Assembly: GCA_025558095.1 (NCBI GenBank)
Contig: JAIVFI010000045.1
Span: 1-64,000 of the forward strand
Length of the DNA: 64,000 bases
Direction: 5' to 3'
Source: Hyaloraphidium curvatum SAG 235-1
Lineage: Eukaryota; Fungi; Monoblepharomycota
Part shown: positions 8,550-21,707 of the stretch, in pieces
How positions within the stretch are numbered: position 1 is the first letter of the stretch
How the letters are laid out: every line of letters starts with the position of its first letter
The notes under the pieces: model-generated
The model's input: only the letters and a program-made list of their open reading frames with translations
The model's database searches: none
Told to the model about the DNA's origin: nothing
Position numbers and translations under genes: made by a program

Positions 8550-9827
8550 CTACTCCGCCACGTCCTGACACACGAGCTTGTGCGACGGCCAGTCCGCAAC
8601 TTGGCACTCCTTGGAGCAGTACCACGCGACGCGACACCGGGAGCACTTTCGCAGTTCCGAACCTTCCGAGGCCTTCCAAGCGCACCCGTTCCTGTCGCAT
8701 GACTCTTCCCGAGCCTGCCTATCGAACGCCTCCAAGTCCCTCCTCTCCTCCTCGGCGTTCTGCACCAGGACCTCGGGGAGCCTGGTCTCGGGGCGGTACA
8801 GCGCGGCTGCGCCGTCCGGGTGGGACAGGGCCGCGAGGTTCATGTACGCCGTGGACATCTCGGTGACGTCGCGCGCCAGCTCCTGCCGCGCGTCGTAGTC
8901 CGCGATGGACCGGGGGTAGAGGATGCGCCCGATCTTGGCCGCCAGGAACTTGTTGGCGGGGCGGTAACGATCGGTGTCGAAGTCCAGGTCCACGACGACG
9001 AGCCCCCGGGCTTCCCGGGCAGGGTCCGAGACGAGCCGCTTCCACCGGTCGGGGCGCTCCCGCGCGGCGTAGAGCACGAGCGTCATGGTGGCGTTCGCAA
9101 AGTGAAGAACCTCCTTCGGCGTGTCGGGCGAATGGAAGGCACCGGCTTCGTCGAGCAGGATGAAAATGTCGCAAATGTCGGCCGTGAGCATCAGCAACGC
9201 GTCCACGAAGTGCAGGTCCTGGGCCAGGCGCCGCCTCACCGCGGGGATGAGGGCCAGCTTCAGCAGCACTGCGAGCACGTAGTGAGCAGACGCATAAGGC
9301 ACTCGGACGAGGGCTTTGTTCATGCTCTCCATCCAGTTCGAAGGCGGGGTCCTTCCGTCGAAGACCGACACCCACGGCCTCGGCGGGTGTCTGGCGTCGG
9401 GCCAGCGCACCGCCGCGCAGAACAGAATGTCGGGATTCAGAGCCGCCAAGGCCACGGTGCGGATGTGGCGGTACGATCCAACAAAGGCGCGGTGGAGCAG
9501 CGCGGCAGCGGGACCCGTTTCGTCCGAACCGAAGCGGTCCTTGTCGCCAAGGAGCGCCTTGTGCGCTTCGATGAGGCACGTGTCGGCCGCGGCAACACGG
9601 TGAATGACGTCCCCCTCGCGGTCCGAAGCCTCGCGCATGGCGGCGGCGACCTCCCGGTGGAGCTGGCTCCCGTTTGCGAACGGAGCTTCTCGCAGGCGAG
9701 CCGCGGAGGCCGTCAGGTCGTCGAACACCGCGGCATACTCGCTCATCGCCGCCGTAAGCTCCGCCAAAGCGAGTGCCGCCTCCGGAGGGAGAGCCTGCTG
9801 CGAATCGGAGGCTGTCGTGTCGCTCAT
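8550..9827 (-). CDS. MYND zinc-finger protein
   Basis: C-terminal CDRNGC...LRKCSRCRVAWYCSKECQVADWPSHKLVC. Confidence 0.9.
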   Translation of the reverse strand: MSDTTASDSQQALPPEAALALAELTAAMSEYAAVFDDLTASAARLREAPFANGSQLHREVAAAMREASDREGDVIHRVAAADTCLIEAHKALLGDKDRFGSDETGPAAALLHRAFVGSYRHIRTVALAALNPDILFCAAVRWPDARHPPRPWVSVFDGRTPPSNWMESMNKALVRVPYASAHYVLAVLLKLALIPAVRRRLAQDLHFVDALLMLTADICDIFILLDEAGAFHSPDTPKEVLHFANATMTLVLYAARERPDRWKRLVSDPAREARGLVVVDLDFDTDRYRPANKFLAAKIGRILYPRSIADYDARQELARDVTEMSTAYMNLAALSHPDGAAALYRPETRLPEVLVQNAEEERRDLEAFDRQAREESCDRNGCAWKASEGSELRKCSRCRVAWYCSKECQVADWPSHKLVCQDVAE

Positions 9828-9885: not shown

Positions 9886-12318
9886 ATGTACGGCCGGCGT
9901 CGGGGCCGCCACGGCGTCGTCGGCCCGTTTTCCGGCGCACTCTTCCTGCTATGCGCGCTGCACGTGCGGGCGGGGCTGCCGGGACTCGGGCTGGCGGGCG
10001 TGGCGGGGCTGCCGGCGTTCGTCGCGTCGCAGGCGTTCGCGGCCGGCCTCGCCGTCCTCGCCCTGCTGGCCAGGAGCTATATCAGGCAGCTGAACTTGGG
10101 TTTCCGTCTGGCTGGAATGGCGTTGCTGGTCGGAGGCGTCGTGTTCAGCGCCCTCTTGCTGCCTATGGCCCACTGGGCGGCAAGGACCACGGGAGACACC
10201 GCCGACGTGCTGTTTGCCGACGAGGGCGCGACCCCGTTGCGGAGGTTGAAGAGCTCCTTCTTGAACGCGGTTGACGCGTCCCTCGCGATCGACGGCGCGT
10301 TGGCGGCTGTTGTCTTGGTGCTCCTCCTCCGCGACCTGCGGAACGTGCTCGGCGGGCGGTTCTTCCTGGAAAACCACAACAGTCCTCGATTTCTTGGTCT
10401 TCGGACTCCGCACCTTATTGCGCTCAGTCTGCTTGGCCTCCTTTTGGGCGCGCGTTGGCCGGCCCCGGATCCGAAGCTGCAGTCTCCCCTGCTCCTGGTC
10501 TTCAAAGGCGCCGCGGGCCAGTCTTCCGAGGACGTCGTGTCGTCGTTCGCCACCTCGATCGCTGACGCTGACGGACCCGTGGATTTCTTTTCCCTGCGCC
10601 ACGGCGCCGTGCCCCTCCCCCAAGAAATGCTGGACTCGCTCGCCCGCACCCGCAAGCGCTGGCTCTCCCTCGGCCGCACCCGCCCGCACGTCGTGCTGGT
10701 CCTCGTGGAATCCGTCGGGGCCCTGAACCTGCTCCCCGGCGGGCGGTGGGACCGGGAGCTGACCCCAAACATGTTCGCGTTCGCCGCCGAGGGTGCGCTC
10801 TTCCCGGCCGTCTACTCGCCCTTCCCCGCGACCATCAGGTCGCACGTGAGCATCATGACGGGCGGCTACGTGCTCACGTGGGGATCCGTCTACAAGGATC
10901 TGGGCCGCGAGTTCCTCGGCCCCACGATCCCGTCGACCTTCCGCGGCAAGGGATACAGGACCGCCTTCTTCTCGAGCGGCTACATGGACAGCGAAAACTC
11001 GGACGGCTACTACCGCGGGCTCGGCTTCGAAGAGCTGTTTTTCCCCGAGGAGCTCCCGCCCGACGACAAGAAGCGCCTCGAGATTTCGAGCTGGGGCATC
11101 GAGGAAGGGCACGTCGCGGACCGCGCGCTGGAGTGGCTGCTCGCGGACTCGGGGTCGCCGGCGCTCCTGGTGTGGAACCTCAACACCCCGCACCACCCGT
11201 ACCTTATCCCCGGCACCGCGGAGCCGTACGAGAAGGGCGCGGACGACAGGAGCAAGCACCGCTCGGCCATGCACCACGTCGACGCCGTGCTGGGCGACTT
11301 TGCCCGGCGGCTCAAGGACGCCGGGTTGGACAACACGGTCGTGGCGCTGGTCGGGGACCACGGCGAGGCCTTCGGCATCGAGCACGCGGGCAACTTCCTG
11401 CACCGCTCCTCGCTGTACGAGGAGAACGTGCGCTCCTTCGCCGTGCTCACCCACCTCGGCGGCGCCCTCGCCGGCAGCCCCGCGGTGGGCGACTTCCCCG
11501 TCGGCAACGGCGCGCTGCTGCCCACCCTCGCCGAGATGGCCGACGGCCGCCCCCGCGCGGGCTCGCTGTTCGCACCGCGGGCGCGGATCCTGTACTTCTT
11601 CAAGAACGCGGGGACGCAGCAGGTCGGGCTCCGGGACGGGGGGTGGAAGTTCGTCGCGGACCAGATGAAGGGCGGCGCGGTGCGGCTGTACAAGCTCGAC
11701 GCGGACCCGGAGTTCGTCCCCGCGTACCCGTCGCTGCCGCCGGAGGAGGACAAGGTGGCCCGCGCGGACGCCTGCGAGACCGAGGACGTCTCGGCGCGCT
11801 ACCCGGAGCTGGCGGCCGAGTACCTGGACCTGTGCAGGAGGTGGCTTGCCGCGGCCCAGAACGCGTGGGCGTCGCGGCTGCGCGGGAACACGGCGGAGGA
11901 CGTGGTGCGCGCGGAGGACCTGCTGGAGCCCGGGCCCAAGAGGATCGCGGTGGGGCACATGGAGGGCGGGGCGGGCTCGGACGAGGAGGACGAGGATGAA
12001 GAAGACGAGGACGAGGACGACGAAGACGACGACGGGGAGACTTTCGTGCCCAGCCTCGACGCCACCATCTCGGTCTCGGCCAAGCCGGCGATCTGGACCA
12101 AGAACGTGGCGTGGATCGAGGACACCAACGTCGTCTACGCCTTCCGCGGGCCGGAGGGGGAGGAGCGGAACGTGAGCTTCGTGCACAGCAGCGAGTGGAT
12201 GGACACGTACCTCTACCCGGCGGCGTCGCTGGACGGGATGCGGGAGGGGAGGTGGGAGGTGGTGCTCTGGCAGGGGGAGAGGAGGCTCTTGGGGATGAAC
12301 TTTACCGTGGTGGCGTGA
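9886..12318 (+). CDS. Membrane-anchored alkaline-phosphatase-superfamily enzyme (LTA synthase/sulfatase-like)
   Basis: N-terminal TM helices, then PHVVLVLVES, PATIRS (putative Thr nucleophile), TPHHPY and VGDHGE. There is an acidic tract near 11980-12035. Confidence 0.8.
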   Translation: MYGRRRGRHGVVGPFSGALFLLCALHVRAGLPGLGLAGVAGLPAFVASQAFAAGLAVLALLARSYIRQLNLGFRLAGMALLVGGVVFSALLLPMAHWAARTTGDTADVLFADEGATPLRRLKSSFLNAVDASLAIDGALAAVVLVLLLRDLRNVLGGRFFLENHNSPRFLGLRTPHLIALSLLGLLLGARWPAPDPKLQSPLLLVFKGAAGQSSEDVVSSFATSIADADGPVDFFSLRHGAVPLPQEMLDSLARTRKRWLSLGRTRPHVVLVLVESVGALNLLPGGRWDRELTPNMFAFAAEGALFPAVYSPFPATIRSHVSIMTGGYVLTWGSVYKDLGREFLGPTIPSTFRGKGYRTAFFSSGYMDSENSDGYYRGLGFEELFFPEELPPDDKKRLEISSWGIEEGHVADRALEWLLADSGSPALLVWNLNTPHHPYLIPGTAEPYEKGADDRSKHRSAMHHVDAVLGDFARRLKDAGLDNTVVALVGDHGEAFGIEHAGNFLHRSSLYEENVRSFAVLTHLGGALAGSPAVGDFPVGNGALLPTLAEMADGRPRAGSLFAPRARILYFFKNAGTQQVGLRDGGWKFVADQMKGGAVRLYKLDADPEFVPAYPSLPPEEDKVARADACETEDVSARYPELAAEYLDLCRRWLAAAQNAWASRLRGNTAEDVVRAEDLLEPGPKRIAVGHMEGGAGSDEEDEDEEDEDEDDEDDDGETFVPSLDATISVSAKPAIWTKNVAWIEDTNVVYAFRGPEGEERNVSFVHSSEWMDTYLYPAASLDGMREGRWEVVLWQGERRLLGMNFTVVA

Positions 12319-12558
12319 CGACCTCTTTCATGGTTGGTCTTTCTCTATCTGGGAACGAAAATGTCTTTCTTCAGCACTCCTTGTGCGACACGCGCGAGCT
12401 TCCCGCGCCGACGTCCGATCTACTAGGCACCACCTGCCATCCGGAGCTGGTCGATACGGCTGCACGTGTTGCAGTAGTACAAATGCCGATCTGCCCAGTG
12501 AGTGTCCTCGATCGCGCGACCCGTGCCCCGGCATAAGCAGACTCTCGCCCGCAACAGC

Positions 12559-14106
12559 ATGCCCAGCACCCTCAAGACCCCGGGCGTCTACATCGTCGAG
12601 AAGAACGCCTTTCCCAGCGCGGTGGTGGAGGTGGCCACCGCGGTGCCGGCCTTCGTCGGCTGGACCGAGCGGGCCGACAACCGGGGCACCTCGCTGCACC
12701 AGACGCCGTGGCCCATCTCGTCGATGGCGGAGTTTAGGACGTACTTTGGCGACGCGCCCACGGCCGGACACGTGCGCTTCACGCTCGCGCCTGCCGGCGG
12801 CACGGGCGACGCCGCACAGCCGCTGTGGGCGCGCGACGCGGCGCCGCTGGTGCTCGGCCGCACCGCATGCACCCTGCGGCAGACCGGCGGACGCTACCTG
12901 CTGTACCGTGCGATCGCGCTGTTCTTCCGCAACGGCGGGGGCCGCTGCTACGTCGTGTCGGCCGGGCCGTACGGCGACCTGGTGAACGCCGCCGCGCTCA
13001 CCGCCGGCGTGGACGCGCTGCAACGGGAGATGGAGCCCACGCTGCTCGTGATTCCCGAGGCCGTGCTGCTCCCGCAGTCCGACTGCGGGCAGCTGCAGCG
13101 GGCGATGCTGGCGCACTGCGGTTCCACGATGAAGAACCGCGTTGCCATCCTGGACGTGTGGGAGGGCTATCGCCCCCGCAGCGAAGACGGCGACGTGGTG
13201 GCCGCCTTCCGCGACGGCGTGGGCAGCGACTTCCTCGCCTTCGGGGCGGCGTATTACCCCTGGCTCAACACCGACCTGGTGGGCGCGCTGGAGCTCTCCC
13301 ACCGCCAGCTCGCGGCGGGCGACAGCCTGGACACCCTCATCGCCTGCCTGCACGAAGAAATCGCCTCGGACCCTTTGATCGACTCTGCAAAGAAGCCGGA
13401 CCTGGTGGCCTGGGTGGACAAGCTGAAGACCGTCACCGACGAGGCCGAAACCGCCACCTTGGTGAGGACAGTGCTCACCTTCAGCCCCGCGTTCGAGACC
13501 CTGCTCTCCGAGATGGCCAGGCGCCTGAACCTGCTGGCGCCGGCCGCGGCGCTGGCCGGCGTCTACACGATGGTGGACAGCAGCCGCGGCGTGTGGACGG
13601 CGCCCGCCAACGTGAGCCTCTCCAGTGTGATCAGCCCGGCCGTGCCCCTGTCGTCCGAAGAGCAAGAGGACCTGAACGTCACAATTACCGGCAAGTCGGT
13701 CAACGCCATCCGCAGCCTCGTCGGCGGGGGCGTGCTGGTGTGGGGTGCCCGCACCCTGGACGGCAACTCCCCGGACTGGCGCTACGTGAGCGTTCGACGC
13801 ACGATGATCATGCTGGAGGAGTCGATCAGGCTCGCCGCCGCGACCATGGTCTTCGAGCCCAACGAGGTCAACACCTGGACGACGGTGAAGTCGATGGTCG
13901 CCAACTTCCTCACCGGCGTGTGGAAGCGCGGCGGCCTGGCCGGCGCCGTGGCCGAAGACGCCTTCGGCGTGCGGGTGGGGCTGGGCGAGACAATGACGCC
14001 CCAGGACGTGCTGGAGGGCGTCATGCGGGTGACGGTGCTCCTCGCGGTGCAGCGGCCGGCGGAGTTCATGGAGGTGACGTTTCAGCAGCAGATGCAGAAA
14101 GGGTGA
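12559..14106 (+). CDS. Contractile tail sheath protein (eCIS Afp2/3, PVC/MAC-type), intact and intronless, 515 aa
   Basis: Motifs KTPGVYIVEK...ATAVPAFVG, FFRNGGGRCYVV, AAYYPWL, RGVWTAPAN, VWGARTL...WRYVSVRR, VFEPN and RPAEF. Confidence 0.93.
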   Translation: MPSTLKTPGVYIVEKNAFPSAVVEVATAVPAFVGWTERADNRGTSLHQTPWPISSMAEFRTYFGDAPTAGHVRFTLAPAGGTGDAAQPLWARDAAPLVLGRTACTLRQTGGRYLLYRAIALFFRNGGGRCYVVSAGPYGDLVNAAALTAGVDALQREMEPTLLVIPEAVLLPQSDCGQLQRAMLAHCGSTMKNRVAILDVWEGYRPRSEDGDVVAAFRDGVGSDFLAFGAAYYPWLNTDLVGALELSHRQLAAGDSLDTLIACLHEEIASDPLIDSAKKPDLVAWVDKLKTVTDEAETATLVRTVLTFSPAFETLLSEMARRLNLLAPAAALAGVYTMVDSSRGVWTAPANVSLSSVISPAVPLSSEEQEDLNVTITGKSVNAIRSLVGGGVLVWGARTLDGNSPDWRYVSVRRTMIMLEESIRLAAATMVFEPNEVNTWTTVKSMVANFLTGVWKRGGLAGAVAEDAFGVRVGLGETMTPQDVLEGVMRVTVLLAVQRPAEFMEVTFQQQMQKG

Positions 14107-14752
14107 GGATGACAGGATGGCTGCGGGCACCCGGATGGGCGTGGCGTAGTATCCATACGTCCCGTCGCTGCGGACACTTCCGTCGACCCCGATCCATGAG
14201 AACCCTGCGATGGAAGCCCCCGCACCGATCGGAAGTGAAAGTACTGCTGGCTGCCGGTGTGGCCATCGCACTGCTGGTCTACGGGCTCACCGGGATGCTG
14301 GTCCGGGTGCTCGGGGTCAGTCACTTCCCCTGCACTGTGGCTGAACCTCGAGCCTCATCGCGCTGAAGGCCGACCGCTGGCATCTGCAGCCCGACCTGGG
14401 CTTCGGCGGCCCGGTCGCGCGCAGCATCCAAATCGATGCACCCGACCCGTCACCGATGTGGACCGTGATTTCCAGCTTTCGGCTGAGGCACGCCCGTGTC
14501 CCACCTCAGCTCATCGGCAGCCTTACGCTCATACAGTACCAGAACCGAGTTTGTCCGACTGTTCACGGCTGCGTAGTGCGTTGTCGTGAAGTCCGTCCCC
14601 TTGTTCGCCGACACCCAGAGCCCTCGTTGCCAAACGTGCTATCTCTTCGGACCTCGATAACTCTGCTTATTGGTGCGGAATGGGTCTGATAGCTTTTGGC
14701 TCGGACCTCGGATCGAGTCGTCTTTGTTCGGTCGCACCGCTTTTTTGGATCT

Positions 14753-16945
14753 CTACCCCTCTTCCTCATAGGACGCTTCACCATCCGAACCATCATCGTC
14801 CCCCTTTCCCTCATACTCAACTGCACGGCTCGGAAGCACCTCAAACTGCCTGCTCGCCCCCTCCCATTCCCTCATCCCCCTGAGCCCCTTGGCCACCCCC
14901 CTCGCGCGGAACCTGTACTCCCCCCCCTCCGTCCCCCTCGCCACGGTCCACCTGCATACATGCTTGGACGCCGCCACCCCGTGCCGCCGCCACTCGAACG
15001 CCGTGTCGGGGTGGTCGTCGTCCAGCGCGGGCATCCACCCCGAGGCCGTCCGCCGCTCGACGAGGCAGTACCACGGCACCCTGTCAAACGCGTTGTTGGG
15101 GTGCGAACCGACAAAGACGGCCTCGGCGGCGGTACCGGCCGCGATCCGGCGGGCAGGCTGCTTGCCGACGTCGCCGTACCCGGTTCCGATCGCGGGGGCG
15201 TCGAGCACCACCTGCCCCCGTAGGAACACCCTGTTCAGATCACCGAGCCCCATGGCCGGCGGCCTGGCCGCATCGGGGAGCGCTCCCGGCGGCGCCCCGC
15301 GCGCCACGTGCGCCGCGACCTTCGAAAATTCCAGCTGCGCGGCCTCGAGCTGGTCTGGCCCGAAATGCGTGCTCGCGCCCTCGTACTCCTGCGCGCCGTA
15401 CTCCTCCCGTGTGGTCATGTACCCCGCGTAGGCGTTGGACACGCACGCGAGCTCGACCCTGGCCACACCGTGCCGCCGCGCGGCGGCGAGGATAGTTTTG
15501 CGGAGGCGGGCGCCGGCGACGGTGGTCACCTCGAAGGGCAGCGCGGCGATGGCCAGGGCGCCGATGCGGACGACCTGCACGGGTAGCACGCGCGGGGTGA
15601 GGGGGAACTTGCGGAGGAAGGAGGCCTCGCCGGTCGCGAGCACGATCTGCTTGGGGCCCTGGCACCGCTTGAGCGCCTTGGAGACGGGCTTCTGGGTGAG
15701 CAGACTGCCGACCCCGCGGAAGAGGCCCGACCAGATCTTGGAGGCCCGGCTGGTGATGTCGCCTTCGGGGATGAGCAGGAGGCCGCGGCCGTCTTCGGTG
15801 CCGGTGTACATGGCGCTACCGACGGCTGCGCTGCAGGTTGTGCGGCCGCCGGGGAGGGACACGTTGGCGAAATCGACGTAGCGCAGCGCGGACGCCACGG
15901 GCCCGTCGAGCTCCTCCGTCGCGGCGCGCAGGGCGGAGAGGGCCAGCTCGAACTGGCGCTTGCCGGCGGTGCGCATCGCCTCTGAGTCCCGCCTGCCGTT
16001 GGGGCCGACGAACTCGCCGCGCCCCTCGCCCCCCGAGCCCGGCTTGTCCAGCAGGTTGGGGCTGACGTCGCCCGAATCCGACTGGCCGAAAGCGGCCACG
16101 TAGCTTGAGCCCTTGTGCTGCTCGAGCAGCCACTCGGCGTACCCCTTGTTGTCGCCGGTGATGAGGCGATGGGCGCTCGAATACGAGGTCGGGTGCAGAG
16201 GGAAGAAGTTGAGCGACCCGATCTCCTTCTCCCTGCCGCCGCGGCCCCGCCGCACGAACCGCAGCAGCGTCATGCGCGTGTTGACGGGCTCGAAGCCGGG
16301 CTGCCTGGCCTCCGGGTCCCGCGCCTGGGCCGTGGCCGCCCGGTTGCGCTGGAGGACGCCCGGGCGGGTCCTTGCCTCGCCGACAAACACCCTCCCCGGG
16401 GCTGCCCCGGCGTCCGCCCGGGCGATCGCGTCGACCACGCCGGCCACGATGCGCTCGTAATGCGGGCGGCTGAAGCCGCCGATCGTCAGGTCGTACAGCA
16501 GCCACCCCTGGTAACCGCCGGGGCCGAGGTGCGTGTGCGTCGCGTGCAGCACGACGTTGTCCTCGCCGTACCGGCCGTCGGCGAACCGCGCCGTCAGCGC
16601 CCGCAGCACGCCGTCGCGGAGCACCTGCGAGAAGCCCCACAGGTCCGCGACGACGAACGCGACGCGTCCGCCCGCGCCGCCGACCACGAACGCGCGCGCC
16701 CACAGCCGCTGCTCGATGCCCGCGCCCGTCTGCGCGCTCTGCGCATAGCCCTGGAAAACCACCTCGGCGGGCGGGCCGGTTATGTCGGCCTTGCCGACGC
16801 CGACAGAGAGCGCGTCGCCGGGCACCGTGCACACGAGGGTCGCGAGGGCAAACGCCGCCGCGGAAATCCCCAGAAGCGGAACACAAAAGCTCCGATGCCG
16901 CAGTCTGGGACTCGGCCCGAACCGGGGCTGCGAGGCTCTGTCCAT
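14753..16945 (-). CDS. Neutral/alkaline non-lysosomal ceramidase
   Basis: VGVGKADITGP, RLWARAF, ATHTH.GPGG, HPTS, GDNKGYA, GDVSPN and EY..QEYEGAST.FGP, plus an N-terminal hydrophobic anchor. Confidence 0.92.
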   Translation of the reverse strand: MDRASQPRFGPSPRLRHRSFCVPLLGISAAAFALATLVCTVPGDALSVGVGKADITGPPAEVVFQGYAQSAQTGAGIEQRLWARAFVVGGAGGRVAFVVADLWGFSQVLRDGVLRALTARFADGRYGEDNVVLHATHTHLGPGGYQGWLLYDLTIGGFSRPHYERIVAGVVDAIARADAGAAPGRVFVGEARTRPGVLQRNRAATAQARDPEARQPGFEPVNTRMTLLRFVRRGRGGREKEIGSLNFFPLHPTSYSSAHRLITGDNKGYAEWLLEQHKGSSYVAAFGQSDSGDVSPNLLDKPGSGGEGRGEFVGPNGRRDSEAMRTAGKRQFELALSALRAATEELDGPVASALRYVDFANVSLPGGRTTCSAAVGSAMYTGTEDGRGLLLIPEGDITSRASKIWSGLFRGVGSLLTQKPVSKALKRCQGPKQIVLATGEASFLRKFPLTPRVLPVQVVRIGALAIAALPFEVTTVAGARLRKTILAAARRHGVARVELACVSNAYAGYMTTREEYGAQEYEGASTHFGPDQLEAAQLEFSKVAAHVARGAPPGALPDAARPPAMGLGDLNRVFLRGQVVLDAPAIGTGYGDVGKQPARRIAAGTAAEAVFVGSHPNNAFDRVPWYCLVERRTASGWMPALDDDHPDTAFEWRRHGVAASKHVCRWTVARGTEGGEYRFRARGVAKGLRGMREWEGASRQFEVLPSRAVEYEGKGDDDGSDGEASYEEEG

Positions 16946-17102
16946 GTTCGAGCGGCTTCGAGTGTTCGGAGAGACGACGGGTCCTCCGAAAAGCTCATCC
17001 GCAAAACCGTTCAGTGGTATGCCGGCCGGAGCCGCACTCCAGCCTACCCGCTCTTCCATCAATGCCCGACCTTACATATCTCGATGTAGCCAGTTCTTGC
17101 GT

Positions 17103-20100
17103 CTAGAAAGGAGTGTAATCCTTCGGGTACCGCGCGAGCAGCTGGGCGCCCTCCACCTCGGGCCACGGGTTGCCCTCGGTCCCGAACGTCTCCTTCAGCA
17201 GCTCGATCCTCAGCTCCGCCAGGCCCTTGATGGCCGAGCCCTTGCTGCTCCGCGTGCAGTCTCCCGCGGGCGGCTCGTCGAGGTACTTGTTCAGCACCTT
17301 GAGCGCCGAGCCGAGGGCACCGCGCCGGCGCTGCCGCCACACGTGGAGCGAAACCATCTTCGAGTCCTTTTCCGGCGACCCGGCCCCGTCGGCCCACTTG
17401 CTGTACTCCAGCCAGGCCGCGACGAGCTCGTCAAAAGGGTTCTTGTCCGCGGGAGCGCCTCCAGCCCTGACAGCTGTCTCCTCCAGCTCCGCCGCCGCCT
17501 TCAGGATCTGCACGCGCTTCAGCATGGCGGACACCATGGCATCCTTCCGCTGGTCCATATCCTTCTTGATCTGCTTCGCGGCGTCCGTCGACGTGTCCGA
17601 CTTGCCAGCGTAGTAGAGCGCGAGCTCGTTCTGGCCCGGACCTGCCGCGTCCGCGTCGCCAGATTTCCGGACGGTCCCGTTTGCCAGGCCGATGATCCGC
17701 TCCGCGAGCTCCACGGCCCTCTGCAGCTCGCCGTTCGCCGAAGCGGCCTTCTCCACGTCGAAAGGTTCGGCCTTGGCGGCATTTTCCGCCTCGCCGACGG
17801 CCGCAGCCTGCAGCGCGTCGAGCTTGGCGGCGAGCAGGGGCAAGTGGTCCGGGAATGACTCCTCCAGCTTCCTGACGAGCTCGTTGCGCCGCGCCACGTC
17901 CTTGAGCTTCGCGATCATGCCGATCTCGACGTCCCTGACGGCCTCGCGGAGCTGCGTGGCCTCGTCCTTCTCCTCCTTCGGCTTCCCGTTCTCCGACTTC
18001 GACTTGGGTCCCTCGGCCGGGACCACCATCGAGATCCCGACCAGCCCGCCGTCGATGCCCACGTTCCCGTTGTCGGTCGTCCCCGCCGGCCCGGCCCAGA
18101 CCTTGAGCTCGCCGACCAGCACGTCCCCCGGCGCGGCCTCCTTGGGCATTCCGTCCGCGGCGATGCCGGAAAGGAAAACCACCCGCCGCTCCCCCTTGGC
18201 GATAACGCGGTCCCCGAACCCGCCCTTGGAGCCCGCCACCAAAGTCCCCGCCGCCCCCGGGTACACCCCCGGCTTGACCTCCTTCACCTTGAGATCCATC
18301 ATCATCGGCCAGCCCTCCTTCAGGATCCGATCCAGCGCCGAGACGTCCGTGGAAAGCACCTGCGCGCGGACGGTGTACTCCCCGCCCTGCTTGGGCAGCT
18401 GCACCGCCTTCGGGTAGACGTCCCGCGTGGCGACCAGCTTGCGGGCCCAGTCGTGGATCATGCACAGGAAGCCGTCAAAGGGCGAGTCGTAGAGGAGGTC
18501 CGTGATCCAGGGGAAGTGGAAGGTGACGGAGCCGCTGTCAGTGGCTGGAACCTTGGGCTCGTAGACGAGGTTGAGGGCGTGCATCTGCTTGCCCGATGGA
18601 TGGACGTCCCGCGAGCCCAGTGGAACGATGGAGGAGAGGTCCTTGTTGAGGGCGACAGTCTTGCGCAGCGTGTCTGGCGACGAAACGCATGTCAGACTCC
18701 GCAGACCGTCGCAACCGAGACATCCCACCGAAGGACGGGTTGAGGTTGATCCGCTCCTTCCTCATCGGGCTCCACACCTCGACCCGCGCCGCCAGCGGCC
18801 CCGTGCCGCCGTTCACCCACAGCCCCCCGCCCCCGACGTTGGCCGTCCCCGCCACGCCGGCCCCGCCCGACACCCAGATCCCCCTGAACTCGACGTCGAC
18901 GTCCATCTCCGTCTCCCCGGGCGAGCTCCAGAACTGCGCCAGGCACACCTCGAGCACCTGCGACGCCGCCACCCGGAAGTGCCTCTGCACGACCGGCGGC
19001 TCGCCGTCCCCGCCGACGACGACGGCGTACTCGGTCTCGTTCCTCTCGGCGCGGGTCTGCGGGATCCCCGGGCCGCCCTGGCCGAGCTGCACCACGATCC
19101 GCGCCGGCGCGTCGCGGGGGCGCGGGCGTAGCACGAGGGTGGCGAAGTTGGCGTGGGGCGGGGCGGCGACGAAGCGGCGGATCACGGTGCCGGGGGAGAA
19201 TTTGAGGCCCGGGAAGCGCACAGTCCCGTCGTCCGGCACCGGGACCGGTTTGACCACCGCGATCGGGATCCGGAAAAGCGGGCCGCGGGAGTCGCCGTCG
19301 ATCGAGCCGCGGATCTCGGCGACGTGCAGGCCCGGGGGCAGCCCCGTGGGGTCCACGCGGATCGGGAAGGTCTTGCCGCCGCCGTTGAGGGCCACGTGGT
19401 CCGGGTGGCGGACCCAGTCCGGTGCGGCGGCGTCGGCATCCTGCGCGTCGGCCACGTGGGACGAGCGCGCCCCGCATTCCAGCCTGATGCGAAGGTCCAT
19501 GGCGGCCTTCATGCCGTTCCAGTTGGCGTTGCCGGGGTCGGCCACATCCCCGGGCCAGACGACGCCGATCGCGACCGAGGTGTGAACGGGCACGGGGTTC
19601 GGCGAGCGAATGTAGAGCCCGCGCGCCGCGTTGCCGGGACCCAGGGCCGAAGGGATCTCGGGGAAGGTGACTGGGTAGTCGAGGTCGTAGGGCGAGAGCC
19701 CGTGCGGCTCCCTTTCGAGGCCCTTGAGCCACTCGAGCGCGCGGGGCAGGTCGACGATGCCTTTCATGAACTCGTCGTTGACGGGGTTGGCGGTGTTCTC
19801 GAGGGCGCGGCGGACAGAATAGGGCGTCCACGAGATTCCGGCCTGACGGAGCGAGGAGAGGAGGAGCGCGGTGCCGCCGCTCGCGTTCGGGCTGCTCATG
19901 CTCGTGCCGTTCATAAGCTGCGGCACCATTGGCTGTCAACGACCGCCTCGCAAACCAGAGCAAGGCACCCACCTGGGTCGGCGCGAGGTTATACCTCGGC
20001 ACGCAGGTCACGGCCCCTCCCGGCGCGTAGACCCCCACCCCCGACCATCCGTCCGGCGCCGGCCCCCTCGAGCTCCATGTGTATACCTTCCCCACCTCGT

Positions 20101-21707
20101 CCCCCTCGGGCAGCACGTCCCCGAACAACCCGTACCCCGCGCGCATCATCCCCCCCGTCACCCACGCCCCGACACCAATCACCCCAGCGGCGGTCCCGCC
20201 GGGCGCCCCGACGGTTGTCAGCCCGGGTCCGTTGTTCCCCGCCGAGGCGAGGAAGGTGGTGTGCGCGTTGGTGAGGGCGCGGAGGAGGGTGGGGATGGCG
20301 CCGAGGGAGGGGAGGGAAGTGGGTTCGCCGTAGGAGAGGTTGGCGACGTCGGTGCGGGATGTGGGGCGGAAGGGGAGGGGGTTGGTGAGGTACGAGACTG
20401 CGATAGGGGTATAGCATGTCATCCGATGTGATTCAGCGGGGAAATGGCGAGATCACGTACTGGCGCGGGTGAGAGCCTGTCCCGTCTCCATGCTGCCGAG
20501 CCTCGTATCCCCGATCTTGAGGCTGACGATCTCGGCGGCCGGCGCGACGCCGTTCTCGCCACTGTCGTCGCTGTGGTAGGCGGCAGTGATGCCGGCGACG
20601 TGGGTGCCGTGGGCGCCGGCCAGGGTGACCAGCGACAACGTGGGCGGGGCTGAGGGAAGGTGCGGCGGGTAGATAGTGATTGATAGGGTGAGGAGGGAGG
20701 GGAGAACCAGGTACTGCTGGGCCACGTGGTACGAGGCGAGGACCGGTTGGTCTGCAGACGGTCAGCGAAGTGGGGCACAGTCACCGCACGGCTCGCAACC
20801 CACCACTGAGGTCCCCGCTCTCTGCGATGTCGACTACGGCGACCCACTTCTCCCCGTCGTCCCACACAACGCAGTCAAATACCGGCCCCGGGTCGTCGAA
20901 CTTGGCCATCATGTCCTTGAGCGCTTCTAGCCGGTCCTTGTAATCCTGCACCCTCTCCGCCTTGGTCAAGCCCTTCCCCACAGCCGCCTCCTTCTCCTTC
21001 TCGGCGTCCTCCTTCTGAGCGTCGAAGTCCGCCAGCTCGGCCGCAACGCGGGTGGCCAGCGCGTGGTGCTGCTTCTCGAAAGCGTCCCGGCGCTCCTTCT
21101 TGCTCTTGGCCACCAGGTTCTGCGGGAACACCTCGTAGCCGCGCTTGTAGCCGACGAAGAAGGTGCCCGAGGGGTTGGACCAGCCCGGGTTGATTTTGAG
21201 CGGGCGGCCGGACGGGCCGGGGAGGGTGCCGTCGTCACCGGGCGTGACGGGGCCCGAGAGCGGCACGTCGCCGCTAGATTCCAGCAAACAGCGCGTTCCA
21301 CCACCGCAGTCGACAGAAGAATATTAAAAAGTCGGAGATCAAGCGGATCTAGTCAGCCCGACCACGAGATGGGGCTCCAACGCGTCCCACCTCCCCGAGC
21401 AGTCCACGACGTCGACCACCTTCTTCCCGCCCCTCGGCCCCTCCCTCATGCCCGCTGCCGCCGGATCCACGCCCGTGTCGAGGATCGCAACGACGACGCC
21501 GCGGCCGTCCGCTTCGCCGGGCATTTTGTGCGCGGCGGTCGGCGTGCGCGGGACCAAATGTGCCGTCGGGAACGCCGGCGGCGCCATCGCGCGGAGCGGG
21601 TCGGGCCGGTCGGTGATCGCGATCGCCGACGCGCCGCGGAGGTGCGAAGCGAGCTGCAGGACGCGCGGCGCGCCGGTCATCCGCCGCGGGAGCGCGGTAA
21701 GCAACAT
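17103..21707 (-). CDS. TPP2: Tripeptidyl-peptidase II (S8), multi-exon
   Basis: Catalytic-triad segments AILDTGVDP, HGTHVAGI and NGTSMSSPN lie in successive exons. KIGDTRLGSMETG, NLSYGE and SAGNNGP are also present. Confidence 0.93.

What the first reader, a model, noticed from the sequence alone, without database searches (positions are those of the whole stretch)
12559..14106. Intact orphan contractile-injection-system sheath gene in a eukaryotic genome
Seen: an uninterrupted 515-aa ORF with sheath motifs from the N-terminus (TPGVYIVEK) to the C-terminus (RPAEF). It has host-like GC-rich codons, A at -3 of the ATG and no Shine-Dalgarno sequence. It shares the contig with a MYND gene and intron-containing TPP2 and SDR genes. 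No tube, baseplate, spike or ATPase gene is visible in the 64 kb. Established: this sheath type belongs to bacterial eCIS loci (Afp/PVC/MAC), normally beside tube genes, and sheath proteins can self-assemble into polysheaths. Inference: a horizontally acquired, domesticated gene. It could be part of a dispersed eukaryote-encoded injection machine, or a sheath repurposed as a stand-alone filament.
Basis: partly seen in the sequence, partly recalled or inferred. Interest (0 to 1): 0.92.

Follow-up and report, generated by a model that had tools for sequence, protein, structure and literature searches.

The report
Solo bacterial sheath gene in eukaryote
A microbial eukaryote carries, transcribes and splices one bacterial "injection-syringe sheath" gene, taken from bacteria in which the gene already stood alone, so it is a real gene transfer but not a eukaryotic injection machine.

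Summary
Window 12559-14106 (+) is an intact 515-aa contractile-sheath ORF. It aligns end to end with the solved SalCis2 sheath (PDB 9r9h, E 9e-166).

It lies in real eukaryotic DNA, between MYND/sulfatase and ceramidase/TPPII genes. Contigs of an independent public run bridge both junctions. One removes a 60-nt GTGAGT...CAG intron that ends one base before the ATG.

The transferred piece is about 2 kb (12558-14523). It is 76-81% identical in DNA to one bacterial contig (L001) and includes a decayed stub of that bacterium's downstream gene.

The genome (31.9 Mb) has one sheath copy. I found no tube, VgrG/gpD, gp25, PAAR, cap or CIS_tube match, so a dispersed eukaryotic injection machine is not supported.

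New point: the three closest bacterial relatives (67-71% identity) are also solo sheath genes. They form a fully supported clade with the window gene inside Burkholderiales-type SalCIS-like operon sheaths. The orphan state therefore predates the transfer.

"Host-like codons" is uninformative, because donor-type bacteria have the same GC3 (about 0.9).

Function is not shown. The likeliest role is a tube-less, self-assembling sheath polymer. A transcribed passenger gene is a serious rival.

The parts
12559..14106 (+). Intact 515-aa SalCis2-type contractile sheath CDS in a single exon
   Evidence: ORF. Pfam PF17482 above cut-off. Residues 4-514 align with PDB 9r9h at E 9e-166. Single copy in the genome.
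12558..14523 (+). Bacterium-derived DNA fragment of about 2 kb, the extent of DNA similarity to bacterial contig L001
   Evidence: blastn: 12558-14108 matches L001 10000-11559 at 79.6%; 14134-14344 matches L001 11726-11936 at 76%; 14345-14523 matches L001 12243-12428 at 81%. The genome search reproduced all three segments. No similarity upstream of 12558 or downstream of 14523.
12498..12557 (+). 60-nt spliceosomal intron (GTGAGT...CAG) in the 5' leader, ending one base before the bacterial-derived DNA and two bases before the ATG
   Evidence: One contig of run X1 joins 12497 to 12558 and skips 60 nt with GT..AG ends. It has 598 and 195 matching letters on the two sides and no mismatch. Sequence read.
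12319..12497 (+). Host-derived leader exon, which is at the same time the sulfatase 3' trailer; holds an in-frame stop at 12475 and an out-of-frame uATG at 12483
   Evidence: The same X1 contig runs from about 11554, inside the sulfatase CDS, through to 12497. ATG and stop scan. The transcription start is not mapped.
14134..14523 (+). Decayed remnant of the donor's downstream gene (L001 11788-12255, 155 aa, one TM helix); about 306 nt are deleted internally, leaving a 56-codon stub at 14196-14366
   Evidence: blastn. The stub is 54% identical to the first 56 residues of the L001 protein. The X1 sheath contig ends at 14293 inside it, so it serves as 3' UTR.
14382..14752 (-). Ceramidase 3' UTR, whose last 142 nt (14382-14523) lie in the bacterial-derived DNA
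   Evidence: X1 contig of 1562 nt covers 14382-15943 without mismatch and bridges the 3' junction at 14523.
9886..12318 (+). Upstream host neighbour: membrane sulfatase / LTA-synthase-like gene, same strand, stop 240 nt before the sheath ATG
   Evidence: Pfam Sulfatase 6e-26. No relative above 37% identity. Joined to the sheath in one X1 contig.
14753..17062 (-). Downstream host neighbour: neutral ceramidase, convergent with the sheath gene
   Evidence: Pfam Ceramidase_alk 3e-126. Best hits are oomycete ceramidases at about 40% identity.
8550..9827 (-). MYND-finger gene, a eukaryotic marker 2.7 kb upstream
   Evidence: PF01753 at 2.4e-11.
17103..20422 (-). Tripeptidyl-peptidase II gene, a eukaryotic marker with an inferred 55-nt GT..AG intron near 18675-18729
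   Evidence: PF12580, PF12583 and PF00082 on two ORFs in different frames. The frame shift is resolved by a 55-nt GT..AG stretch.

Best explanation
A bacterial DNA fragment of about 2 kb was inserted into the nuclear genome of a GC-rich microbial eukaryote. It lies between the 3' ends of two convergent host genes. It carries a SalCis2-type contractile-sheath gene and the start of the donor's next gene. The donor was a GC-rich, probably Burkholderiales-like bacterium in which the sheath gene already stood alone, away from any tube or baseplate genes. Shown: the insertion is real; it is transcribed; the transcript has a host-type 60-nt intron just before the ATG; the co-transferred neighbour gene has decayed while the 515-codon sheath frame is intact; and no other injection-system part was found in the genome. 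Inferred: the protein, if made, acts alone. It keeps both terminal 'handshake' (donor-strand) segments and 95% of the family's near-invariant residues. It should therefore polymerise into a tube-less, contracted-type sheath cylinder (a polysheath). That would be a cytoplasmic structural polymer, not a syringe. Its use to the cell is unknown.
For: Membership and intactness.

Eukaryotic setting.

Integration:
- X1 contigs bridge the 5' junction (through the spliced intron) and the 3' junction.
- DNA-type run X2, from a second study, shows depth of about 6-7 on both the sheath and its flanks.
- No donor flank DNA occurs elsewhere in the assembly (positive control).

Origin from a solo lineage:
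- The window gene forms an SH-aLRT 100 clade with three bacterial sheaths (L001, L007, L088). None has a CIS gene within about 10 kb or up to the contig end.
- DNA synteny with L001 runs past the ORF.
- A second solo pair (L014, L018) lies in genomes with no tube match at all, while the same profile found tubes in three control genomes.

No machine: no tube, VgrG/gpD, gp25, PAAR, cap or CIS_tube match in 31.9 Mb. Controls rang for gp25, gpD and PAAR, and for the tube profile.

Constraint:
- 141 of 148 near-invariant columns are kept.
- Only one 3-codon indel separates the gene from L001, and codon-position identity is 0.81/0.84/0.72.
- The neighbouring co-transferred gene lost about 306 nt.

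Self-assembly precedent: SalCis2 forms sheath assemblies off the baseplate in a cap-adaptor mutant (PMC13266070). Recombinant T4 gp18 forms polysheaths (PMC9230969).
Against: - No protein evidence exists.
- The transcription start is unmapped. The only contig covering the 5' end also contains sulfatase coding sequence, so the sheath ORF may be reached only by read-through of the upstream gene.
- In the spliced RNA the ATG context is weak (C at -3), and an out-of-frame uATG lies 15 nt upstream.
- A crude three-point NG86 estimate gives dN/dS of about 0.5-0.6 on the window branch, against about 0.33 on the bacterial sister branches.
- The window ranks 6th of 93 for changes at near-invariant positions, including R52P and loss of the Lys in the WKAPAN motif.
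- Run X1 is labelled RNA only by guess. Its RNA nature is inferred from the GT..AG joint, contig ends at gene boundaries and gene-specific depths.
- Genome-wide absence of tube genes could not be tested for the three closest bacterial relatives.
Confidence: 0.5

Rival explanations
1. Transcribed passenger. The transfer is real, but the gene has no function in the eukaryote. It is transcribed because it landed in the trailer of an expressed host gene, and it is slowly decaying. The open frame persists because stop codons are rare in 69% GC DNA and the transfer is not very old.
For: - Long chance ORFs overlap the gene on other frames.
- The contig is continuous with the sulfatase CDS, the ATG context is weak and a uATG is present.
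- dN/dS is raised on the window branch, and 7 near-invariant residues are changed.
- The co-transferred neighbour gene is already broken.
- No orthologue from another eukaryote shows retention over time.
Against: - A canonical intron sits exactly at the 5' edge of the insert, so the ORF begins two bases into an exon.
- There are no frameshifts and only one in-frame 3-codon indel over 1545 nt, while the adjacent 0.4 kb suffered a 306-nt deletion.
- 95% of near-invariant residues are kept, and third codon positions diverge most.
- Transcript depth is similar to or above that of the ceramidase neighbour (weak evidence).
Confidence: 0.38
2. Dispersed eukaryote-encoded contractile injection system. 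Tube, baseplate, spike and ATPase genes sit elsewhere in the genome and work with this sheath.
For: Only the intact, well-conserved sheath itself. It keeps nearly all residues conserved in operon sheaths: 232 of 241 columns in the solo clade.
Against: - No match in the 31.9-Mb, 55-contig assembly to a tube profile, VgrG protein, PF05954, PF04965, PF05488, PF14065, PF19266 or PF06841.
- Working positive controls exist for the tube profile and for gp25, gpD and PAAR.
- The transferred fragment is only about 2 kb and comes from a lineage that is already solo.
- No other first-stage note on this genome mentions a tube or baseplate.
Confidence: 0.03
3. Contamination or assembly chimera. The sheath belongs to an associated bacterium and was mis-joined to a eukaryotic contig.
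For: The composition matches GC-rich bacteria, and the nearest relatives are all bacterial.
Against: - Contigs of run X1 cross both junctions without mismatch, and one is spliced.
- A second study's run shows equal depth on the gene and its flanks.
- Host genes lie within 240 nt and 650 nt of the ORF.
- No donor-like flank DNA occurs anywhere in the assembly.
Confidence: 0.02

Closest known systems
SalCis2, the sheath of the Salmonella enterica subsp. salamae contractile injection system (PDB 9r9h/9r9i; PMC13266070)
   Same: Alignment is full-length (residues 4-514 against 3-518, E 9e-166). The length is the same, about 515-519 aa. It is the single-sheath-protein type. The N-terminal KTPGVYIVE and C-terminal RPAEF..TFQQ donor-strand segments are conserved.
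   Different: SalCis2 sits in an operon between the cap/cap-adaptor genes and the tube genes, and it polymerises on a tube and baseplate. The window gene has none of these partners in its genome. SalCis2 Lys43, one of the X-loop salt-bridge residues named in the paper, aligns with Thr44 here by my reading of the alignment.
Solo sheath genes of uncultured GC-rich bacteria (P0002 on L001, P0003 on L088, P0013 on L007)
   Same: These are the closest relatives: 67-71% protein identity and up to 79.6% DNA identity. They form one fully supported clade with the window gene. All stand alone among unrelated genes. L001 even shares the downstream gene.
   Different: They are bacterial, with no intron. 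In L001 the downstream 155-aa gene is intact. Whether their genomes hold a CIS locus elsewhere is unknown.
SalCIS-like operons of Burkholderiales and other bacteria (e.g. L005 Rubrivivax MAG, L004, L038 Roseateles)
   Same: The sheaths are 55-66% identical and of the same length and architecture. This is the next-nearest clade in the tree.
   Different: They have the full set of neighbours: Pvc16_N cap, cap adaptor, two gp19-type tubes, CIS_tube, VgrG, PAAR, gp25 and large baseplate proteins.
Polysheaths of phage T4 gp18 and off-pathway sheath assemblies
   Same: A sheath protein without tube or baseplate polymerises on its own (PMC9230969; 'low-energy assemblies' of SalCis2 in PMC13266070). 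This is the behaviour predicted here.
   Different: Those are by-products of a disturbed assembly. Here, the solo state would be the normal state. This is not tested.
Afp / PVC / MAC extracellular injection systems
   Same: Homologous C-terminal sheath domain (Pvc2-4 and Afp2-4 at E 1e-35 to 1e-48).
   Different: Those systems use two or three short sheath paralogues of 350-450 aa. Similarity covers only the last 200 or so residues. The window protein is not of that subtype.

Membership tests
Contractile tail / CIS sheath protein family (Pfam Phage_sheath_1 + Phage_sheath_1C) | Sequence match to the sheath C-terminal domain above the curated threshold | tested here: met
   PF17482 scores 35.8 bits against a cut-off of 26.9. 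PF04984 scores 22.9, below its 31.4 cut-off.
Contractile tail / CIS sheath protein family (Pfam Phage_sheath_1 + Phage_sheath_1C) | Full-length collinear homology to a sheath of solved structure | tested here: met
   PDB 9r9h (SalCis2): E 9e-166, residues 4-514 against 3-518. AlgoCIS and tCIS sheaths score E 1e-99 and 1e-91.
Contractile tail / CIS sheath protein family (Pfam Phage_sheath_1 + Phage_sheath_1C) | N- and C-terminal donor-strand ('handshake') segments that link subunits | tested here: met
   Both termini align without truncation. Bins 1-50 and 476-515 match the operon consensus at 68-80%. This is sequence level only; no assembly was tested.
Contractile tail / CIS sheath protein family (Pfam Phage_sheath_1 + Phage_sheath_1C) | Polymerises as a contractile helix around a tube | not testable with these tools
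   Needs expression and EM. No tube partner exists in the genome.
Complete contractile injection system locus (eCIS / SalCIS type) | Tube protein (gp19/Hcp-like) encoded with the sheath | tested here: not met
   No match to PF06841 or to a profile of four cognate tubes in the whole genome. The same profile found tubes in 3 control genomes, and the tube queries found them in more than 70 bacterial loci.
Complete contractile injection system locus (eCIS / SalCIS type) | Spike and baseplate (VgrG/gpD, PAAR, gp25, CIS_tube hub) and cap | tested here: not met
   No match to a VgrG protein, PF05954, PF05488, PF04965, PF19266 or PF14065. Controls rang for PF05954, PF05488 and PF04965, but not for PF19266 and PF14065.
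Complete contractile injection system locus (eCIS / SalCIS type) | AAA+ loading ATPase (Afp15/Cis15) | not tested
   AAA+ proteins abound in any eukaryote, so a family search would not discriminate.
Bacterium-to-eukaryote horizontally transferred, expressed nuclear gene | Nests within bacterial homologues, with no vertical eukaryotic relatives | tested here: met
   For all four with genomic context among the ten closest (P0002, P0003, P0006, P0007), plus P0009, P0013 and P0014, the context is bacterial; top hits without context were not checked. Clade with bacterial solo sheaths has SH-aLRT 100.
Bacterium-to-eukaryote horizontally transferred, expressed nuclear gene | Physical linkage to host genes in data other than the assembly | tested here: met
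   X1 contigs bridge 12497/12558 and 14523. X2 depth is equal on the gene and its flanks. All are Logan contigs, not raw long reads.
Bacterium-to-eukaryote horizontally transferred, expressed nuclear gene | Eukaryotic transcript features (spliceosomal intron, polyadenylation) | tested here: inconclusive
   A 60-nt GTGAGT..CAG joint is seen in one contig. Poly(A) and the cap site were not observable. The library type of X1 is not on record.
Bacterium-to-eukaryote horizontally transferred, expressed nuclear gene | Purifying selection after transfer | tested here: inconclusive
   The frame is intact, 141 of 148 invariant residues are kept and the neighbour gene has decayed. Against this, the branch dN/dS is about 0.5-0.6 by a crude method, and there are no eukaryotic orthologues.

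The most novel reading that the evidence does not exclude
Sheath proteins of contractile injection systems have a second, partner-free life. A small lineage of solo sheath genes persists in bacteria and has been passed on to a eukaryote. There it is spliced and expressed, and it builds a stand-alone tubular or contractile polymer. That would parallel the bacterial R-body proteins said (from memory, not checked here) to build cryptophyte ejectisomes. The recurrent loss of the same near-invariant residues only in solo sheaths, such as the Lys of WKAPAN, would mark the surfaces that once held the tube, cap or baseplate.
Probability: 0.25. Interest if true: 0.85.

Novelty: new variant of a known kind. 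Interest (0 to 1): 0.62.

Why it matters
My two library searches found no report of a contractile-injection-system sheath gene in a eukaryotic nuclear genome, nor of a conserved solo-sheath lineage in bacteria. This is a limited search, not proof of absence.

The case is unusually clean for a bacterium-to-eukaryote transfer. Both breakpoints can be placed to within a few bases. A decayed co-transferred gene gives an internal neutral control. It also shows how a promoterless bacterial ORF can become expressed: it was inserted into the trailer of a host gene, with an intron ending at the insert's edge.

If the protein is made and polymerises, it would be a new kind of eukaryotic cytoplasmic polymer. 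It would also offer a simple system for studying sheath assembly without a tube or baseplate.

If it is only a passenger, the finding is an ordinary single-gene transfer, though a neatly documented one.

Tried and rejected
- Codon usage or GC3 as evidence of amelioration. Rejected, because host genes and donor-type bacterial sheaths have the same GC3 and similar RSCU distances.
- Looking for window-clade members with genome handles among 400 genomes of the order of G003. None exceeded 64% identity to P0002, so genome-wide absence of tube genes could not be tested for the closest bacterial relatives.
- The listing of cluster members gave no organism names for the solo relatives.
- A partner gene shared among solo-sheath loci. 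None was found except the L001/window downstream gene.
- Clade-specific remodelling of a surface in the solo clade. Only 9 of 241 operon-conserved columns changed, all conservatively.
- YN00 dN/dS failed numerically, so only NG86 is reported. It is biased by the extreme codon bias.
- Rfam and tRNA scans of the window found nothing.
- The protein atlas gave only bacterial sheath clusters.
- Identifying the host.
- Not run: complex prediction, because two full copies exceed the size limit and a pass would add little beyond the close homology to a solved polymer. Structure prediction was skipped for the same reason.
- Compliance points. The spliced leader was joined only inside a local script, to list ATG and stop positions.
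Full report
**1. The observation**

Window 12559-14106 (+) is an uninterrupted 515-codon ORF. Openness alone is weak evidence in this 69% GC stretch. The reverse strand carries a 647-aa ORF and another forward frame a 513-aa ORF over the same DNA.

The homology is decisive.
- Pfam Phage_sheath_1C is above its curated cut-off.
- Residues 4-514 align collinearly with residues 3-518 of a solved sheath, PDB 9r9h, at E 9e-166.
- 9r9h is SalCis2, the single sheath protein of the Salmonella enterica subsp. salamae contractile injection system. Its authors place that system in eCIS clade Ib with AlgoCIS (PMC13266070).
- Afp and PVC sheaths match only over the last 200 or so residues.

**2. The setting is eukaryotic and the gene is integrated**

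The window is the first 64 kb of contig C45 of a 31.9-Mb, 55-contig assembly. Around the gene lie:
- a MYND-finger gene (8550-9827, -);
- a membrane sulfatase / LTA-synthase-like gene (9886-12318, +);
- a neutral ceramidase (14753-17062, -);
- tripeptidyl-peptidase II (17103-20422, -);
- further on, an SNAPC3 gene.

The TPPII reading frame is restored by removing a 55-nt GT..AG stretch. The ceramidase is most like oomycete enzymes, but only at about 40% identity. The host is therefore a microbial eukaryote without close sequenced kin in the databases.

Three public runs of the same organism, from two studies, hold the stretch. Laying them gave three results.
- (a) A 1139-nt contig of run X1 covers about 11554-12497 and continues at 12558-12752. 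It skips exactly 60 nt whose ends are GT..AG. The sequence reads GTGAGT...CAG.
- (b) A 1562-nt X1 contig covers 14382-15943.
- (c) Contigs of the DNA-type run X2 have the same depth, about 6-7, on the sheath gene and on the ceramidase and TPPII genes.

X1 is labelled RNA only by guess. Four things are what a transcriptome gives: the canonical splice joint, contig ends at 14293 and 14382 between the two convergent genes, gene-specific depths (about 53-66 for the sheath, 16 for ceramidase, 161 for TPPII), and a TPPII contig that runs 366 nt into the ceramidase gene.

Contamination or a chimeric join is thus refuted for practical purposes. In addition, nothing resembling the donor's flanking 10 kb occurs anywhere in the assembly. 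The same search finds the sheath segment at 76-81% identity, which serves as a positive control.

**3. Extent and source of the transferred DNA**

The nearest proteins are all bacterial or metagenomic, at 71% identity or less. At the DNA level three segments match the contig of the nearest one, L001, which carries P0002 (reproduced).

| Window | L001 | Identity |
|---|---|---|
| 12558-14108 | 10000-11559 | 79.6% |
| 14134-14344 | 11726-11936 | 76% |
| 14345-14523 | 12243-12428 | 81% |

- The two downstream pieces are the ends of L001's next gene, a 155-aa protein with one TM helix and no Pfam family. About 306 nt between them are missing in the window.
- What remains is a 56-codon stub (14196-14366), 54% identical to the protein's N-terminus.
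- Similarity starts at 12558, one base before the ATG and directly after the intron's AG. It stops at 14523.
- The insert is therefore about 1.97 kb and lies between the 3' ends of two convergent host genes.
- The sheath transcript contig ends inside the stub, at about 14293. The ceramidase 3' UTR ends 142 nt inside the insert.

L001 also carries a NiFe-hydrogenase operon. Its large subunit is up to 84% identical to genes in genomes of the order that holds a Rubrivivax MAG. This fits a Burkholderiales-like donor but does not prove one.

**4. The orphan state is older than the transfer**

I fetched the genomic context of the closest relatives.
- P0002 (71%), P0003 (70%), P0006 (67%) and P0013 (67%) are each a lone sheath gene among unrelated, mutually different neighbours.
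- P0007, P0009 and P0014 (62-66%) sit in full operons. The order is cap, cap adaptor, sheath, two gp19-type tubes, DUF5908, CIS_tube, VgrG, PAAR, gp25 and large baseplate proteins.
- Among 80 species-representative genomes, almost all loci are full operons and a few are solo.

In a maximum-likelihood tree of 93 sheaths, the window protein forms an SH-aLRT 100 clade with the solo genes of L001, L007 and L088. The clade sits on a long stem (0.32), inside a clade of Burkholderiales-type operon sheaths. The tree was a "quick" search, and the four GC-rich rows have deviant composition. The DNA synteny with L001 confirms the closest relationship independently.

A second solo pair (L014, L018) lies in genomes of 4.7 and 4.1 Mb with no tube match at all. 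The same tube profile found tubes in three other genomes, including two whose solo sheath is evidently a second copy.

So solo sheath genes exist in bacteria, and one of them was the source here. The eukaryote did not inherit a locus and then lose the rest.

**5. No injection machine in the eukaryote**

The genome holds one sheath copy. It gave no match to any of the following:
- a profile of four cognate tube proteins or PF06841;
- a cognate VgrG or PF05954;
- gp25 PF04965 or PAAR PF05488;
- the cap PF14065 or CIS_tube PF19266.

Built-in controls rang for PF04965, PF05954 and PF05488. The tube profile was validated, and the single-protein queries were validated on more than 70 bacterial loci. 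PF14065, PF19266 and PF06841 had no ringing control, so on their own they show little. The AAA+ ATPase was not searched, because eukaryotes are full of AAA+ proteins. None of about 2,700 first-stage notes on this genome mentions a tube or baseplate (unchecked notes).

**6. Is the gene kept by selection?**

For:
- One 3-codon indel and no frameshift against L001 over 515 codons.
- Identity of 0.81/0.84/0.72 at codon positions 1/2/3.
- 141 of 148 columns that are at least 97% conserved in the family are retained.
- The adjoining co-transferred gene is broken.
- In the solo clade as a whole, only 9 of 241 columns conserved in operon sheaths are changed, all conservatively.

Against:
- A crude three-point NG86 estimate gives dN/dS of about 0.5-0.6 on the window branch and about 0.33 on the L001 and L088 branches. 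Absolute values are inflated by the codon bias.
- The window ranks 6th of 93 in changes at near-invariant positions.
- The three rows that deviate most are solo sheaths too, and a fourth is among the five above the window (the other two have no known context).

Five of the seven near-invariant columns changed in the window are otherwise changed almost only in other solo sheaths. The Lys of the WKAPAN motif is K in 90 of 93 rows, and the three exceptions are the window, L007 and L018. This fits constraints that lapse when partners are gone. It could also simply reflect the generally looser constraint on solo genes.

Codon usage says nothing about residence time, because host and donor-type bacteria share a GC3 of about 0.9.

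**7. Expression caveats**

The 5' end of the sheath transcript is not mapped. The spliced contig also contains at least 760 nt of sulfatase coding sequence, with the sulfatase stop (12316-12318) intact. It may be an assembly of overlapping transcripts, or a read-through RNA. Overlap of neighbouring transcripts is seen elsewhere here, for TPPII and ceramidase.

In the spliced leader:
- an in-frame stop at 12475 excludes an N-terminal extension or a sulfatase fusion;
- an out-of-frame uATG lies at 12483;
- the main ATG has C at -3.

Translation is therefore plausible but unproven.

**8. Mechanism**

Shown: a real, single-gene-sized transfer of a complete sheath gene from a solo bacterial lineage; transcription; splicing; absence of partners.

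Inferred: the protein keeps both donor-strand termini and the conserved core. It should therefore polymerise by itself into a tube-less, contracted-type cylinder. T4 gp18 does this as polysheaths (PMC9230969), and SalCis2 does it off the baseplate (PMC13266070).

I put about 0.5 on a stand-alone function of this kind and about 0.38 on a transcribed passenger. A dispersed machine and an artefact get a few per cent each.

**9. Novelty and score**

The protein is a new member of a known family. The situation is a new variant: a solo sheath lineage in bacteria and an expressed, intron-fronted copy in a eukaryote. I found no report of it in the paper library (limited searches).

It stays above average because the transfer is unusually well resolved and the solo-sheath idea can be tested directly.

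Noticed in passing
L014 (8001-9542) and L018 (1898-3439); genomes G001, G002: Two Betaproteobacteria MAGs (4.7 and 4.1 Mb) carry a solo SalCis2-type sheath gene. They have no tube-protein match anywhere in the genome, while the same profile finds tubes in control genomes. Solo sheaths may therefore be a recurrent bacterial phenomenon.
   Followed up: partly
window 13597-13599 (Thr347) and matching alignment column: The Lys of the near-invariant W-K-A-P-A-N motif is K in 90 of 93 sheaths. The only three exceptions are solo sheaths: the window (T), L007 (T) and L018 (N). R52 and I504 show the same pattern, with their only other deviants also solo. These may be partner-contact residues freed from constraint.
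   Followed up: partly
window 9886-12318 (+): The upstream sulfatase / LTA-synthase-like membrane protein has no relative above 37% identity. Its named relatives are bacterial MdoB/LTA-synthase-like enzymes, so it may be an older, separate acquisition. It shares an X1 transcript contig with the sheath gene.
   Followed up: partly
window 16737-17103 (-): The TPPII stop (17103) and the ceramidase ATG (17062) are only 40 nt apart on the same strand. An X1 contig shows the TPPII transcript running 366 nt into the ceramidase coding region, so overlapping tandem transcription units seem normal in this compact genome.
   Followed up: no
window about 18675-18729 (-): An inferred 55-nt GT..AG intron in TPPII (GTGGGA...CCAG, with a CTGAC branch-like motif) restores the reading frame between two ORFs. 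Its size matches the 60-nt intron in front of the sheath gene.
   Followed up: partly
window 15944-16032 (-): There is an 89-nt gap between two X1 contigs inside the uninterrupted ceramidase ORF, and one contig carries 23 unmatched letters at that edge. This could be an assembly break, a variant or an alternative splice. It is unexplained.
   Followed up: no
window 12328-14271 (-) and 12825-14366 (+): ORFs of 647 aa and 513 aa overlap the sheath gene in other frames. They are by-products of GC3-rich coding DNA and a reminder that ORF length alone proves nothing here.
   Followed up: yes
L001 11788-12255 (+): The donor-side downstream gene encodes a 155-aa protein with one TM helix and no Pfam family. 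It is not found next to the other solo sheaths, so it is probably not a functional partner.
   Followed up: partly
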